A stretch of 63,967 bases of DNA, counting the filler, from Octopus bimaculoides (Eukaryota): the NCBI RefSeq assembly GCF_001194135.2. It is 9 parts of 9 records of this genome, joined end to end, with 100 filler letters (N's around TTAATTAATTAA, not from the genome) between each part and the next. Parts side by side here need not be neighbours in the genome. Positions count along the whole stretch, not along the records: positions 54,443 to 62,768 come from NC_068985.1; 8 more parts are not named here. One strand, given 5' to 3'. Position numbers and translations under genes: made by a program. Positions 58,872 through 62,868 of the stretch are shown here, in pieces. How positions within the stretch are numbered: the stretch's first letter is position 1; every line of letters begins with the position of its first letter. The notes under the pieces are model-generated. The model did not search any database. It worked only from the letters and a program-made list of their open reading frames with translations, and was not told the DNA's origin.

Positions 58872-59069
58872 CTACGAATTTTTATTGGGAATCTCAAATG
58901 ACAAAGTTTTACTCAGGTACCATGACCAGTAACCCAAACTGAAGAGGAGAAAACAGAGAGGAAAACTAATACGGGATATAACATCCATTCGTTTCGCTTT
59001 GGAACGCATCTGTGCTTCGGTCCTTTCATCGCATTCGGCTTTGATATCTCCGTTCTCGACGCTTTCAGC
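58872..59069 (-). CDS. Cys-loop anion channel subunit, terminal coding exon with M4 and stop
   Basis: Acceptor tttctataccacag|GCT in phase 0, matching the upstream donor. 198 nt reading AESVENGDIKAECDERTEAQMRSKAKRMDVISRISFPLCFLLFSLGYWSWYLSKTLSFEIPNKNS*; AKRMDVISRISFP...YW..Y is the canonical M4 signature. Not in the ORF track because the frame lacks a start. Confidence 0.93.
   Translation of the reverse strand, partial: AESVENGDIKAECDERTEAQMRSKAKRMDVISRISFPLCFLLFSLGYWSWYLSKTLSFEIPNKNS
58881..58886 (-). terminator. AATAAA hexamer inside the last codons of the channel gene (candidate poly(A) signal)
   Basis: CCC AAT AAA AAT TCG TAG; U/GU-rich sequence follows 35-80 nt downstream. Confidence 0.25.
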
Positions 59070-59161
59070 CTGTGGTATAGAAAATCAAAAGACATGCTGT
59101 ATTAAAGCTAATAATTTACACGTCACATATACACACACCCAGTACACACACACACACACAC

Positions 59162-59192
<31 letters not shown>

Positions 59193-59259
59193 TGCACACA
59201 ACAGTACACATAAGTACACATAAGTACACACACNNNNNNNNNNATAAGTACACACACAC

Positions 59260-59290
<31 letters not shown>

Positions 59291-59890
59291 TGCACACAAC
59301 AGTACACATAAGTACACATAAGTACACACACACACACAACAGTACACATAAGTACACACACGCACATATACATATGTACGCATACGCATGTACATGTGCG
59401 TGTGAGTGTGTGTATGTGTGACTGTGTGTATGTGTGTATGTGTGTATGTGTGCCTCTGTGTGTGTGTCTCTGTGTGTGTGCCTCTGTGTACCTCTGTGTG
59501 CGAGTGTGTGTATGTGTGAGTGTGTGTGTGTTTGCGTGTGCGCGCGTGTGTGTGTGCCTTTGTGAGTGAGTGTCTGTGTGTGTTAGCGCGCGTGCGTGTG
59601 TGTGTGTATTTGTGCCTGTGTGTACAAGTAAATGATAACAGCCTAACTCAGCTTCACACGACACAAAGTTTCGTGAGTGCGTAGAACACGCCCGTCTCAT
59701 CAGTTGTTAAGAGGTAGAGTGGCCTCTGAATAACGAATGAGATGAACCGTTCTATGCCCCCGCGAAACTTTAAGCTATGCACAGCTGAATCAAACTATCT
59801 CTGAATACATGTATTTCTAACCAAATGAAACGTTTGATTCTTTAGATGTTGCAAAATTCCACGTAGTTTTGTATTGAATGTGAAGTTTTA

Positions 59891-59945
<55 letters not shown>

Positions 59946-59948
59946 CAT

Positions 59949-60382
59949 TGAGTAAGAGAGCAGTGCATGCCATCAAAGTGACACGGGTAAAATATACGAA
60001 GCCCATTATACCCATCATGACTACCCGTCTGATAAGGGTACACCAGGCACATGCATCACAACCATATGTGCGTGACATGGTGATCTCATATCAAGATAAA
60101 CAGCGCATGACCTTGCAGGTGGAGCCCAGTTAGAATTTTCTTCAGGTCGAGTAGCCTATTCCGCTCAAAAGGTCCCTGAATAACGGTTGTTTAAAGATGT
60201 TGAACAAAACACCCATGTTTCCAAAGGTTAATTATTCAAACCCCAAAGAATTCCTTTCAACACATGGCTATGATGCTCCCACACTACTTCTGCTCGTGAT
60301 CAGAGATGTACATATCGTCAGCCACCAAGGGACATGCTCAACTGGTTATGGTCAAACAACTGACAAGCAACTGACAAGCAAA
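59949..60382 (-). mobile_element. Same (AAT)n-tailed repeat, in the last intron of the channel gene (sense orientation)
   Basis: Collinear reverse complement of about 18470-18865; (ATT)n runs on both sides. Confidence 0.8.
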
Positions 60383-60775
60383 TATTATTATTATTATTAT
60401 TATTTTATTATTATTACTATTATTATTATTATTATTACTATTATTATTATTATTATTATTATTATGCGCCCTTTTCAAGCCTAGCCAGGCTCATGGGCCC
60501 GGTTTCCCGGTTTCTATGGCGTAGAGGAGTGTGTGCGTGTGTGTGGAGTAATAGAAGGAGAGAGAGAGAAAAGAAAAAGAGCGAGAAACAGAGAACGAGA
60601 GAGAGGCAGAAAGTGAGAAGGAGAGTGAGAGAGAGAGAGAGAAAAGAGAGGGTAAGGTGTGTGTGTGTGTGAAGTAATGGGAGAGAGAGAAGGGAAAGAG
60701 AGAGAGAGAAGGGAGAGAGAGAAACAGAGAGAAAAAGAGAGAAATGGAGAGAGAGACATAGAGAGAGACAGACAT

Positions 60776-60820
<45 letters not shown>

Positions 60821-60846
60821 GTGAGAGCAAGAGAGAAAGGACTTAC

Positions 60847-61238
60847 TTGGTTAACGTTGAATGTTTGTTTTAGGCTTCTGTTGTTCTGAATAACTTTGAT
60901 GGAAAAGCGCTTGGTTTCGTGTCTGGAATACGTACTGACCACAGCGTATTCTAAGAGGGCGGCAAACACGAAAACCAAGCACGTGACAGTCCACACATCG
61001 ATGGCTTTGACATAAGAGACGGGAGGCAGCGAGATAGCAGTTGACTGTCTTTGCGTTATCATGATTAATACGGTGGTGCTGCCCAGTGCGATTCTGGCAG
61101 GAACTGCGTTGATGGGGAGCCAGAACGATACCCATGATATGAACACTATCATCGTACTCGGAATGAATACTTGTAAAAGAAAGAACTCAACACGTCTCTG
61201 CAGGTAAATGAAGGCCACAATACAGGTGAACTCATTCT
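60847..61238 (-). CDS. Cys-loop anion channel subunit, exon with end of loop C, M1, M2, M3 and start of the intracellular loop
   Basis: 392 nt, acceptor tttttacag|AG (G+AG completes a Glu codon with the upstream exon), donor AACCAA|gtaagt (phase 0). Contains FTC, FIPSTMIVFISWVSFW (M1), PARIALGSTTVLIMITQ (M2, PAR anion motif) and LPPVSYVKAIDVW...FVFAALLEYAVV (M3). Confidence 0.97.
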
Positions 61239-62132
61239 CTGTAAAAACCAAAAAAAAAAAACCAAAAAAAACAATAAAGAAGTATTGTCTCCCTTGTTTG
61301 GGTTTACTGTTTCATATGGTCCAAAGATGTTTACATGTAAAAGAGACAGAGGAAGACAAGGCTCTTAATGTTACCATAAATGACCGTGCCGATCAGCTGG
61401 ATGAAGTTGTCTAACTCAATGGTTGCAAAGTCGAATGAAAGATGCAACAGATTTGACAACTCCAATTGACCTGGTTACCTAGCCATCGGGTTCACTTGGC
61501 ATATTTGTGAAGAAGCGAGTGTTTCTTGGAATGCAAAAGAACACGTTAAATAACACTACNNNNNNNNNNNNNNNNNNNNNNNNNNNNNNNNNNNNNNNNN
61601 NNNNNNNNNNNNNNNNNNNNNNNNNNNNNNNNNNNNNNNNNNNNNNNNNNNNNNNNNNNNNNNNNNNNNNNNNNNNNNNNNNNNNNNNNNNNNNNNNNNN
61701 NNNNNNNNNNNNNNNNNNNNNNNNNNNNNNNNNNNNNNNNNNNNNNNNNNNNNNNNNNNNNNNNNNNNTATATATATATATATATATGTAGACTTTTTCA
61801 ATTCCCGAGCGTTATACTAATACATCTGTTTGTTTTCTATACCATCTGTAGTATGAATTTAAGCATATGTGTGTGAGTTTGTCTCTGTGCATGTCGATCG
61901 CGAGGGATAACCATAACGACTAAGAGGCCGTATTAATCGTTAAACTGTGTTAATCTTTAAACCTTGGCTCAAAAGCTAGCAACAGAATGAACCTTGCTAA
62001 ATCCATCAAGAGTCTGGTCGTCGAAGTAATGTTCGACTCGACCAAATAAAAAGTCACTTGTGTTTGAAATTCAGTTTTGTCGATGTCTTGGATGTGATTA
62101 ACAAAGAAATTAGAACAAACGAGATCGATTAC

Positions 62133-62264
62133 CTTCATGTTTAGTGGAACAGTTCTCAGGCTGTATATCATCAATCACAAACTGAGCCATCTCAAGTTTA
62201 CCATATATCGCTACCGGATTATTGTCCTGCCACATGAATACTACGTTATCAGGAGTGTAAACAA
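62133..62264 (-). CDS. Cys-loop anion channel subunit (GlyR/GluCl-like), internal exon with loop B end, loop F and first half of loop C
   Basis: 132 nt, phase 1-1, acceptor ttttgcag|TT and donor GAAG|gtaatc. Reads (x)VYTPDNVVFMWQDNNPVAIYGKLEMAQFVIDDIQPENCSTKHE, aligning to GlyR alpha1 [46 protein letters not shown] with the same exon boundaries. Confidence 0.93.
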
Positions 62265-62484
62265 CTGCAAAAGAAACATTAACGAAAAGTAGTATGAATT
62301 TATACATGTGTGTGTCAGTTTGTCTCTATGCATGTTTGATAAGTATGTATGAATATATACTTTTATATATTTGCATATTTAATATGCAATATGAATATAT
62401 TATGCATATATTAATATATATACCAAATTGGTGAAATTGTCATTAAACTATATAGGTAGGAATACTTTTATTTATTATTATTAT

Positions 62485-62692
62485 TGTGTCCGTTCGGCTC
62501 TATGTCCGTTCAGCATTGTGTCCGTTCGGCTTTATGTCCGTTCAACATTGTGTCCGTTCGGCTTTATGTCCGTTCGGCTTTATGTCCGTTCGGCATTGTG
62601 TCCGTTCGGCTTCATGTCTGTTCGGCATTGTGTCTGTTCGGCTCTATGTCCGTTCAACATTGTGTCCGTTCGATTTTATGTCCGTTCAGCTT
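62485..62692. repeat. 16-bp minisatellite x13 with a 32-bp higher-order pattern
   Basis: Units TGTGTCCGTTCGGCTY alternate with TATGTCCGTTCRRCAT. Intronic, 220 bp 5' of the 62264 acceptor. Confidence 0.93.
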
Positions 62693-62868
62693 CTTGGCTT
62701 CCGCTTGTTCTCCTTCGGCAAAAGTGCATTCGGCATCCTGTCCGCGTACGATATGAAACAGCACCAATNNNNNNNNNNNNNNNNNNNNNNNNNNNNNNNN
62801 NNNNNNNNNNNNTTAATTAATTAANNNNNNNNNNNNNNNNNNNNNNNNNNNNNNNNNNNNNNNNNNNN

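What the first reader, a model, noticed from the sequence alone, without database searches (positions are those of the whole stretch)
61222..62264. Rewired agonist pocket: candidate orphan chloride channel not gated by an amino acid
Seen after splicing: loop C is CSTKHEENEFTC. It keeps the C-x10-C disulfide and the distal aromatic of GlyR (CTKHYNTGKFTC) but has His at Y202, Glu at T204 and Asn at G205. Loop B has Val at G160, loop F reads MAQF instead of LPQF, and an N-C-S sequon sits at the first Cys. Known: GlyR T204 and GluCl T197 contact the agonist carboxylate, and the loop C T-G pair is kept in GlyR, GluCl and HisCl; invertebrate relatives are gated by amines, acetylcholine or pH. Inference: an acidic H-E-E-N-E loop should disfavour glycine and glutamate and favour a cationic amine, protons or Zn2+, or an environmental chemical. 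The clean splicing and open frame argue for a functional gene. This is the best candidate here for an undescribed signalling component, distinct from the nAChR-derived chemotactile receptors.
Basis: partly seen in the sequence, partly recalled or inferred. Interest (0 to 1): 0.72.

Follow-up and report, generated by a model that had tools for sequence, protein, structure and literature searches.

The report
Orphan octopus chloride-channel subunit, altered pocket
This is the back half of an Octopus bimaculoides gene, labelled "glycine receptor alpha-2" in RefSeq, whose agonist pocket lacks every residue that normally holds an amino acid's carboxylate, so its natural trigger is unknown and probably not glycine or glutamate bound in the usual way.

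Summary
On the minus strand, exon 62264-62133 joins exon 61238-60847 in frame to give loop C CSTKHEENEFTC, then M1-M3 with a PAR anion filter. A third exon, 59069-58872, adds M4 and the stop codon. The 209-N gap lies inside the intron and hides no exon.

The three exons match RefSeq XP_052824041.1 (Octopus bimaculoides "glycine receptor subunit alpha-2") exactly. The gene is therefore annotated, but probably misnamed.

The loop D Arg (GlyR R65) is Thr, the loop E Ser (S129) is Arg and the loop B Glu (E157) is Lys.

All pocket residues are invariant across three paralogue groups in octopods and decapods. None of the 147 nearest non-clade cluster representatives has the motif. The clade sits in a mollusc-wide GlyR-like group that also lacks the loop D Arg. 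Lynagh et al. 2015 noted lophotrochozoan anionic subunit classes without the amino-acid motif, untested.

- His202 is unique to O. bimaculoides; relatives have Tyr or Phe.
- Lys at E157 argues against simple amine binding.
- The Cys-loop exon falls in a 2,183-N assembly gap, so intactness is unproven.

The ligand remains unknown.

The parts
62265..62768 (-). 3' end of the upstream intron, with a 16-bp tandem repeat at 62487-62692. The edge of the piece at 62768 abuts a 2,183-N gap in the chromosome assembly.
   Evidence: piece position 1 = L004 21373; N run at L004 19190-21372. No Cys-loop exon was found here by tblastn.
62133..62264 (-). Coding exon of 132 nt. It holds the end of loop B (x-V-Y-T), loop F (LEMAQF), and the first half of loop C (N-C-S-T-K-H-E plus the first base of the next Glu codon).
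   Evidence: It has an AG acceptor and a GT donor. It is an exact substring of XP_052824041.1. The same exon occurs in L001 at about 6393-6525.
62137..62139 (-). CAT codon for His at the GlyR Y202 position. This is the only pocket residue that differs from all relatives, which have Tyr or Phe.
61239..62132 (-). Phase-1 intron that splits the second Glu codon of loop C (G|AG). It contains the assembly gap 61560-61768 (209 N), which is flanked by a (TA)n run.
   Evidence: The same 209-N gap is present in GCA_001194135.2. The L001 intron has the same position and phase.
60847..61238 (-). Coding exon of 392 nt. It holds the second half of loop C (E-N-E-F-T-C), pre-M1, M1, M2, M3 and the start of the short M3-M4 loop. 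In M2 the P-A-R filter is at 61101-61093 and the 9' Leu is kept.
   Evidence: Pfam PF02932 at 2.5e-25. GlyR alpha-3 at 9e-45.
59070..60846 (-). Phase-0 intron rich in microsatellites ((GAGA)n, (TAT)n, (TG)n/(AC)n), with a 10-N gap at 59234-59243.
58872..59069 (-). Last coding exon of 198 nt. It holds the end of the M3-M4 loop, M4 (ISFPLCFLLFSLGYWSWYL) and the TAG stop.
   Evidence: It reads AESVENG...EIPNKNS*, which is identical to the C-terminus of XP_052824041.1.

Best explanation
What is shown. The window holds the last three coding exons of an Octopus bimaculoides gene, RefSeq XP_052824041.1, named 'glycine receptor subunit alpha-2'. It encodes a subunit of a pentameric Cys-loop ligand-gated channel of the GABA-A/GlyR/GluCl branch. 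The P-A-R filter and the 9' Leu in M2 predict a gated chloride pore. The gene belongs to a clade of three paralogue groups seen only in coleoid cephalopods. This clade sits within a mollusc-wide set of GlyR-like subunits that lack the loop D arginine.

The clade keeps the aromatic box of the orthosteric site: loop A Y-F, loop B F and Y, loop C Y/F...F. It has replaced every residue that holds an amino-acid agonist's carboxylate, and it has redistributed the charges: R65->T, S129->R, T204->E, N203->E, G205->N, E157->K and G160->V. These residues do not vary within the clade, whereas about half of the ligand-binding domain does. The site is therefore used rather than decayed.

What is inferred. 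The channel is not gated by glycine, glutamate or GABA bound in the canonical pose. It responds to a different agonist that fits between the aromatic box, the loop C Glu-Glu pair, Lys157 and Arg129/Arg131. That agonist is still unidentified. It could be a cationic or zwitterionic small molecule, or protons titrating the Glu/Lys network. On binding it would open a chloride conductance, alone or in heteromers with its paralogues. The His at position 202 is a peculiarity of O. bimaculoides and not part of the family design.
For: Identity:
- The spliced window exons are an exact substring of XP_052824041.1 and XP_014782107.1.
- The piece maps at 100% identity to chromosome CM046605.1.

Family:
- PF02932 and PF02931 both hit.
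- The best solved relatives are GlyR alpha-3/alpha-1 at 9e-45, then GluCl at 2e-34.
- The PAR filter is visible in the sequence.

Pocket:
- HMMER and MAFFT equivalences to GlyR give T at R65, R at S129, K at E157, V at G160 and E-E-N at 203-205.
- Of the 20 pocket positions tabulated, 19 are invariant in 10 clade sequences and only 202 varies. Overall, 78 of 161 ligand-binding-domain positions are invariant.
- Mutating the loop D Arg, loop E Ser or loop C Thr in the GluCl AVR-14B abolishes glutamate gating or shifts its potency about 400- to 700-fold (PMC4338433).

Clade:
- NJ bootstrap is 100 for the clade and 85 for its union with the mollusc group that lacks the loop D Arg.
- None of the 147 nearest non-clade 50%-cluster representatives among 1.84 billion carries EENxF[TS]C or KSFxY.

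Expression and splicing of relatives:
- Intronless contigs in RNA-type assemblies encode full-length proteins with an uninterrupted loop C.

No deorphanised match:
- The list of characterised LGICs in Courtney et al. 2025 contains no member of this group.
- The proton-gated Alv-a1-pHCl has canonical loops.
Against: - No functional data exist for any clade member, so ligand, ion selectivity and homomeric assembly are all inferred from sequence.
- Arg129 and Arg131 on the complementary face could still hold a carboxylate. Lynagh et al. showed experimentally in a GluCl that an Arg supplied from either face of the site (loop G or loop A) is sufficient for glutamate gating.
- Aplysia GluClAc1 (P0147) is named as a glutamate-gated channel although it has Ser where GlyR has R65.
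- Alv-a1-pHCl shows that pocket residues do not reliably predict the gating stimulus.
- Lys at E157 removes the usual partner of an agonist's amine.
- In O. bimaculoides the Cys-loop exon and the first exon are not in the assembly, so an intact gene is not demonstrated in this species.
- The NJ tree is a simple distance tree without outgroup GABA-A sequences.
Confidence: 0.6

Rival explanations
1. It is still an amino-acid-gated chloride channel, responding to glycine, beta-alanine, taurine, GABA or glutamate. The carboxylate-binding arginine has simply moved from loop D to loop E (R129, next to R131). The amine partner has moved from loop B Glu to the loop C Glu pair.
For: - R at S129 and R at 131 are invariant in the clade.
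- Lynagh et al. 2015 showed that the arginine for glutamate's second carboxylate arose in different loops and on opposite faces in different lineages, and that either position works experimentally.
- P0147 (Aplysia GluClAc1) lacks the loop D Arg in my alignment.
- The aromatic box is fully kept.
Against: - Two adjacent Glu at 203/204 on loop C, directly over the site where the carboxylate sits in GlyR and GluCl, should repel it.
- The loop C Thr, loop E Ser and loop D Arg are all lost together. Each single loss costs 400-fold or more in potency in AVR-14B.
- The loop A Arg typical of lophotrochozoan GluCls is absent (YFANEK).
Confidence: 0.2
2. It is a chloride channel gated by protons or by a metal ion, in the manner of insect pHCl/Hodor or Alvinella Alv-a1-pHCl. 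The Glu-Glu/Lys/His network would act as the titratable sensor.
For: - The pocket holds a cluster of titratable residues: E203, E204, K157 and H119, plus H202 and E206 in O. bimaculoides.
- Proton-gated and Zn-gated members of the anionic branch exist (list).
Against: - The only lophotrochozoan proton-gated relative whose sequence I could read has canonical loops (IYFRQ, ESYSYQ, CTKEYKTGSF). There is no shared signature.
- His202 is not conserved.
- Nothing in the sequence is diagnostic of pH or Zn gating.
Confidence: 0.12
3. It does not bind an agonist itself. Either it is an accessory subunit of a heteromer whose ligand site is supplied by another subunit, or the O. bimaculoides copy is a decaying gene.
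For: - All three O. bimaculoides models lack a proper Cys-loop exon and have spurious N-termini.
- O. bimaculoides alone carries a substitution (H202) at an otherwise invariant aromatic position.
- Several octopus LGIC paralogues gave no homomeric current in oocytes in Courtney et al. (DopC2, AChRB2/3).
Against: - The missing exon coincides with a 2,183-N assembly gap placed exactly where the exon is expected. In L001 it lies about 280 bp upstream of the loop B exon.
- All exons that are present are open, with canonical splice sites, and are 98-99% identical to O. vulgaris and O. sinensis.
- Pocket residues are more conserved than the rest of the domain and are shared by all three paralogue groups, which is the opposite of a degenerate site.
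Confidence: 0.07
4. The loop C sequence is an artefact of joining two contigs across the N gap, through mis-scaffolding or a hidden exon.
For: The two halves of loop C lie on opposite sides of an unsized gap.
Against: - The two exons have the same strand and order, and compatible phase.
- The intron position and phase are identical in a gap-free cuttlefish-like locus.
- Loop C has the same length, and EENxFTC is the same, in nine relatives including intronless transcripts.
Confidence: 0.01

Closest known systems
Vertebrate glycine receptor alpha subunits (e.g. GlyR alpha-3, PDB 5CFB/5TIN; alpha-1, 6PLR)
   Same: - They are the best solved relatives (9e-45 over loop B to M3; about 40% identity).
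- The fold and the four TM helices are the same.
- The P-A-R anion filter and the 9' Leu are shared.
- The second disulfide in loop C has the same C-x10-C length.
- Aromatic residues at 99/100, 159, 161 and 207 are shared.
- There is a short conserved pre-M1 'LQRR/LERQ'.
   Different: R65->T, S129->R, R119->H, F63->I, E157->K, G160->V, N203->E, T204->E, G205->N. Y202->H applies to O. bimaculoides only. R19' in M2 is lost and R15' gained. The M3-M4 loop is very short. The gene is not nested within the vertebrate clade in the NJ tree.
Mollusc-wide orphan 'GlyR alpha-2-like' subunits that lack the loop D Arg (e.g. Haliotis P0088, Mactra P0089, Littorina P0135, Octopus sinensis P0118/P0127). These may correspond to the unnamed classes without the amino-acid-agonist motif noted by Lynagh et al. 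2015.
   Same: - They group with the cephalopod clade (bootstrap 85).
- Loop D has no Arg.
- Loop E reads Y-[R/K]-x-R.
- Loop C is often acidic.
- M2 has a basic residue at 15' (TQ[K/R]).
- None has been characterised functionally.
   Different: They have Gln at 157 (rarely Arg or Glu), not Lys. Loop B reads SFA[F/Y][S/T], not SFVYT. Loop C varies in length and sequence and often keeps Gly205. None has [Y/F]EENxFTC.
Lophotrochozoan glutamate-gated chloride channels (Aplysia GluClAc1/2, Kehoe 2009; Schistosoma SmGluCl; analysed by Lynagh 2015)
   Same: They are anion-selective pLGICs of the same branch in molluscs and flatworms, at about 38-45% identity.
   Different: They have the loop A Arg (FFRNEK), and most keep the amino-acid-agonist motif. 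This gene has YFANEK and lacks the three carboxylate-binding residues.
Non-amino-acid-gated members of the anionic branch: Alvinella Alv-a1-pHCl, Drosophila pHCl / pHCl-2 (Hodor), and C. elegans amine- and choline-gated LGCs
   Same: They set the precedent that GlyR/GluCl-like chloride channels can be gated by protons, Zn2+, amines, choline or betaine.
   Different: There is no shared pocket signature. Alv-a1-pHCl has canonical loops D, B and C. No orthology was detected.
Cephalopod chemotactile receptors (CRs)
   Same: They are a lineage-specific cephalopod expansion of pLGICs with a remodelled orthosteric site.
   Different: CRs derive from nicotinic (cationic) receptors. This gene is in the GABA-A/GlyR-like branch and has a PAR filter.

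Membership tests
[quoted passage not shown] | Neur_chan_LBD (PF02931) and Neur_chan_memb (PF02932) domains | tested here: met
   The window fragment hits PF02932 at 2.5e-25. O. bimaculoides' own upstream exons hit PF02931 at 2.7e-24, and the Argonauta orthologue hits both.
[quoted passage not shown] | The C-x13-C 'Cys loop' in the extracellular domain | not testable with these tools
   The exon is absent from the piece and from all O. bimaculoides models. It should lie in the 2,183-N gap. It is present in the orthologues, e.g. CPMHLQNFPLDTQVC in O. vulgaris.
[quoted passage not shown] | Four transmembrane helices M1-M4 | tested here: met
   M1-M3 lie in exon 61238-60847 and M4 in exon 59069-58872. 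They align throughout with GlyR.
Anion-selective GABA-A/GlyR/GluCl branch | Pro-Ala-Arg at M2 positions -2' to 0' | tested here: met
   AVPARIALG; the codons are at 61101-61093. Selectivity itself is inferred and was not measured.
Anion-selective GABA-A/GlyR/GluCl branch | A second disulfide within loop C, a trait of GlyR, GluCl and HisCl | tested here: met
   C-x10-C, the same length as in GlyR.
Glycine receptor alpha (the RefSeq name) | Loop D arginine (R65) that binds the agonist carboxylate | tested here: not met
   It is Thr in O. bimaculoides' own exon and in all 10 clade sequences.
Glycine receptor alpha (the RefSeq name) | Loop E serine (S129) and loop C threonine (T204), the hydroxyls that hold the carboxylate | tested here: not met
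   S129->R and T204->E, both invariant in the clade.
Glycine receptor alpha (the RefSeq name) | The initial loop B glutamate (E157), typical of glycine-binding subunits (Lynagh 2015) | tested here: not met
   It is Lys in all 9 clade sequences that carry the exon. In O. bimaculoides itself the residue lies in the missing exon.
Glycine receptor alpha (the RefSeq name) | The aromatic box (loop A F99/F100, loop B F159/Y161, loop C Y202/F207) | tested here: met
   The residues are Y-F, F, Y and F. There are two exceptions in O. bimaculoides: Y202 is His, and the first base of the F159 codon lies in the missing exon (?TT).
Glycine receptor alpha (the RefSeq name) | Orthology with vertebrate GLRA genes | tested here: inconclusive
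   In the NJ tree the cephalopod clade plus the mollusc no-Arg group is sister to (annelid/nemertean + vertebrate GlyR) with 66% support. It is not nested within GlyR.
Lophotrochozoan glutamate-gated chloride channel | Loop A arginine (FFRNEK) together with the amino-acid-agonist motif | tested here: not met
   Loop A is YFANEK, and the motif lacks Arg, Ser and Thr.
Proton-gated chloride channels (pHCl, Alv-a1-pHCl) | No sequence signature is known; the family is defined by function | not testable with these tools
   The loops of Alv-a1-pHCl, read from the alignment of Courtney et al., are canonical and unlike this gene.
Cephalopod chemotactile receptors | Descent from nicotinic (cationic) receptors | tested here: not met
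   All strong hits are GlyR, GluCl or GABA-A, and the pore has a PAR filter.

The most novel reading that the evidence does not exclude
The coleoid clade is a new functional class of chloride channel. Its orthosteric site has been rebuilt around a charge-swapped network: Lys157 from loop B reaches into the aromatic box where an agonist's amine normally sits, and it is paired with Glu203/Glu204 of loop C and Arg129 across the interface. Gating would come from a non-classical stimulus that breaks or bridges this network. Candidates are an abundant marine osmolyte or environmental chemical (betaine, TMAO, homarine or a similar molecule), or pH. This would give cephalopods an inhibitory or sensory signalling pathway with no counterpart in other animals.
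Probability: 0.15. Interest if true: 0.75.

Novelty: new variant of a known kind. Interest (0 to 1): 0.45.

Why it matters
- Ligands of invertebrate Cys-loop receptors are repeatedly mispredicted from homology, and this gene carries the name "glycine receptor alpha-2" in RefSeq.
- The name probably rests on overall similarity alone. The whole carboxylate-binding half of the site is replaced yet strictly conserved across octopuses, argonauts and cuttlefish-like decapods.
- This singles out a small, tractable set of three paralogue groups for deorphanisation.
- A hit would add a transmitter or stimulus to cephalopod inhibitory signalling. It would also give a natural experiment in how the GlyR pocket can be re-specified.
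- The finding also flags a concrete annotation defect: an exon missing in an assembly gap.

Tried and rejected
- A third homologue search used only the loop B to loop C segment. The aim was to find octopus transcripts that would test the splice and the His codon independently. It returned no candidates, so there is no independent check of CAT versus TAT.
- The look-up of the O. vulgaris model P0087 found no record. No O. vulgaris DNA was available, so no dN/dS could be computed.
- I looked for the exons upstream of loop D in L001 1-3620 and found nothing convincing. The signal-peptide exon was also not found in L004.
- Accession numbers of the gene and its paralogues appear in no searchable paper.
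- Supplement 5 of Courtney et al. holds only HCR probe sequences. Their supplement 1 lists only the reported receptors and not all 41 tested. Whether this clade was screened is therefore unknown.
- MolluscaGenes deals only with the nicotinic branch.
- I did not run structure prediction. The tool returns no coordinates and cannot build the inter-subunit pocket, so it could not test the Lys157-Glu204 proximity. Fold membership was already settled by sequence.
- Rejected: orthology to Alv-a1-pHCl, because its loops are canonical.
- Rejected: a hidden exon in the gap.
- Rejected: A-to-I editing as the source of His/Tyr, because the difference is C/T in the genome and not A/G.
Full report
OBSERVATION

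The gene lies on the minus strand. Exon 62264-62133 has the acceptor ttcttttgcag| and the donor |gtaatc. It reads (x)VYTPDNVVFMWQDNNPVAIYGKLEMAQFVIDDIQPENCSTKHE and ends with the first base of a Glu codon.

Exon 61238-60847 has the acceptor gtttttacag| and the donor |gtaagt. It supplies the other two bases and continues ENEFTCIVAFIYLQRR, then M1, M2 (AVPARIALGSTTVLIMITQRQ) and M3, ending at ...NVNQ. My first script wrongly included base 60846 in this exon. The correct end is 60847.

A third exon, 59069-58872, encodes AESVENG...KAKRMDVISRISFPLCFLLFSLGYWSWYL...KNS and a TAG stop.

Loop C is therefore CSTKHEENEFTC. HMMER prefers to align TKH with TKH and opens one gap. That affects only position 202.

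THE GAP

The N run 61560-61768 is inside the phase-1 intron that splits the second Glu codon of loop C (G|AG), and it is bordered by a (TA)n run. Four lines of evidence show that nothing coding is hidden there.
- The two exons have the same orientation and compatible phase.
- A related, gap-free locus (L001, ENA ERZ21867824, cuttlefish-like) has an intron at the same codon and phase (GAA G|gt...ag|AA AAC), with no LGIC-like tblastn hit inside it.
- Nine relatives have a loop C of identical length.
- Two of those relatives come from intronless contigs of 1.4-1.6 kb that encode full-length proteins, so they are transcripts (L005 from SRR27666061 and L006 from SRR27666058).

IDENTITY

The second homologue search returned P0082 = XP_052824041.1, "glycine receptor subunit alpha-2 [Octopus bimaculoides]". 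The 239 residues encoded by the three window exons are an exact substring of it and of the older XP_014782107.1.

The piece maps at 100% identity to chromosome CM046605.1 of GCA_001194135.2 (L004), which carries the same 209-N gap. The chromosome assembly reuses the same contigs, so it is not an independent check of the His codon.

STATE OF THE GENE IN O. BIMACULOIDES

All three public models are defective. Two jump from ...HLYKN straight to VVYTPDN. The third fills the space with unrelated residues. All three have spurious N-termini.

O. vulgaris, Argonauta and Sepia have the expected exon GTIKYRVR|LTITGACPMHLQNFPLDTQVCSIVIKS|F. In L004 the piece's upstream edge (window 62768) abuts a 2,183-N run at L004 19190-21372. 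In L001 the Cys-loop exon sits only about 280 bp upstream of the loop B exon. The simplest reading is that the exon lies in the gap. That is an inference, so "intact functional gene" is not shown for this species.

The exons that are present are open, have canonical splice sites, and are 98-99% identical to O. vulgaris and O. sinensis.

THE REST OF THE POCKET

L004 also yields O. bimaculoides' own upstream exons at 8498-8569, 16249-16317 and 17405-17632. Aligned by HMMER to the GlyR alpha-3 crystal construct, mdytmtfiltqiw pairs with mdyrvniflrqkw, and tikyrvr pairs with nvlysir. This puts Thr at R65 and Arg at S129, and keeps R131.

Lynagh et al. 2015 (PMC4338433) define the "amino acid agonist motif" of GluCl, GlyR and GABA-A subunits as follows:
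- aromatic residues and one Thr from loops A-C;
- one Arg from loop D;
- one Ser from loop E.

In the GluCl AVR-14B they showed that R95A abolishes glutamate gating. S169A and T245A raise the EC50 from 0.04 mM to 27 mM and 16 mM respectively.

Here the aromatic residues are kept, but the Arg, the Ser and the Thr are all replaced. The loop B Glu typical of glycine-binding subunits is Lys in every relative that has the exon. The loop A Arg of lophotrochozoan GluCls is absent (YFANEK).

CONSERVATION

I compared ten sequences in three paralogue groups:
- XP_052824041-like: Octopus, Argonauta, Sepia pharaonis and a decapod transcript;
- P0083-like;
- P0084/85/86-like.

Positions 63, 65, 99, 100, 117, 119, 129, 131, 157-162, 203-205, 207 and 208 never vary. 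Across residues 55-215, 78 of 161 positions are invariant. The flanking loop C positions 199-201 and 206 vary freely.

The single exception in the pocket is position 202. It is Tyr or Phe everywhere except O. bimaculoides, which has His (codon CAT, 62139-62137). Glu at 206 is confined to Octopus.

The family signature is therefore [Y/F]-E-E-N-x-F-T-C together with K-S-F-V-Y-T, and not H-E-E-N-E. This pattern is what one expects of a site that is in use, not of a degenerate one.

PLACEMENT

In an NJ tree of 90 non-redundant relatives (Kimura distances, 380 columns, 100 bootstraps) the results were:
- the clade is monophyletic (bootstrap 100);
- it joins, at 85, a mollusc-wide set of "GlyR alpha-2-like" subunits from gastropods, bivalves, a chiton and octopus;
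- this larger group is sister, at 66, to annelid/nemertean canonical subunits plus vertebrate GlyRs.

The mollusc-wide set also lacks the loop D Arg. It has Y-[R/K]-x-R in loop E, usually Gln at 157, and often an acidic loop C (for example CTEEDENGNFTC in Haliotis and CTPQDDDDEYFAGFTC in Littorina).

A full HMMER scan of 1.84 billion cluster representatives found 15,863 relatives. None of the 147 closest non-clade representatives carries EENxF[TS]C or KSFxY.

[quoted passage not shown] The general phenomenon is therefore known. I did not find this coleoid clade and its invariant pocket described anywhere.

LITERATURE ON FUNCTION

Courtney et al. (bioRxiv 10.1101/2025.04.02.646353) expressed 41 O. 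vulgaris LGICs and tested them against 18 ligands. They report only DopC1 and AChRB1, both from the nicotinic branch.

Their table of characterised LGICs contains no member of this group. The nearest lophotrochozoan entries are Aplysia GluCl, Alvinella Alpo5/6 (glycine) and Alv-a1-pHCl (protons).

I read Alv-a1-pHCl from their alignment. It has IYFRQ, ESYSYQ and CTKEYKTGSF, which are canonical loops. It is therefore not a model for this gene. It also shows that pocket residues do not always predict the stimulus.

MECHANISM

Shown:
- it is a Cys-loop subunit of the anionic branch with a PAR filter;
- the carboxylate-binding triad is replaced;
- the pocket is invariant within the clade.

Inferred:
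- it forms a chloride channel;
- it does not bind Gly, Glu or GABA in the canonical pose;
- its agonist must fit a site lined by the aromatic box, Glu203/Glu204, Lys157 and Arg129/Arg131.

The charges are rearranged rather than simply made acidic. The negative charge has moved from loop B to loop C, and the positive charge from loop D to loops E and B. I therefore do not endorse "cationic amine" over other options.

A zwitterion in a shifted pose, or a titratable salt-bridge network, fits equally well. A relocated-arginine solution for a carboxylate ligand remains a live rival, given the precedent in Lynagh et al.

VERDICT

This is an orphan, probably misnamed subunit of a lineage-specific variant of a known family. 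It is a good target for deorphanisation, but not a surprise to specialists in invertebrate LGICs.

Noticed in passing
window 62768 (piece edge) = L004 21373; L004 19190-21372: The piece begins exactly at the end of a 2,183-N gap in the O. bimaculoides chromosome assembly. The Cys-loop exon of this gene is missing from all three public gene models and is expected there. RefSeq XP_052824041.1 and XP_014782107.1 are therefore defective models: they skip or invent an exon and carry spurious N-termini of about 130 residues.
   Followed up: partly
window 62487-62692: A 16-bp tandem repeat (TGTCCGTTCGGCTTTA, about 13 copies, 78% matches) fills the intron just upstream of the loop B exon. In the cuttlefish-like locus L001 this intron is only about 280 bp long.
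   Followed up: no
window 59131-59623 and 60383-60836: The last intron consists largely of microsatellites ((AC)n/(TG)n of about 230 bp, (TAT)28, (GAGA)n of about 280 bp). It also contains a 10-N gap at 59234-59243.
   Followed up: no
P0087 / P0202 (O. vulgaris CAI9722939.1 and CAI9722940.1): The two O. vulgaris models of the orthologue are also faulty. One jumps from pre-M1 (FFLLQ) directly to the M4 exon. The other runs out of frame after M2 (...SLPPSLMSKPSMCGLSRAWFSCLPRF). Both carry about 290 unrelated N-terminal residues.
   Followed up: no
L001 19511-20465: A retrotransposon pol ORF (RT_RNaseH, Integrase_H2C2 and rve domains) lies about 3.4 kb downstream of the M4 exon in the cuttlefish-like locus.
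   Followed up: no
P0084/P0085/P0086 (paralogue group; O. bimaculoides XP_052828513.1 and relatives): This paralogue group has T-A-A-R instead of V-P-A-R before M2, so the -2' proline is lost. Its M3-M4 loop is longer, yet its pocket residues are identical. Its ion selectivity may differ from that of the other two groups.
   Followed up: no
The word-indexed homologue search found no candidate for a 75-residue query that is an exact substring of P0082, a protein in the same database. Negative results from that tool with short queries should not be read as absence.
   Followed up: no
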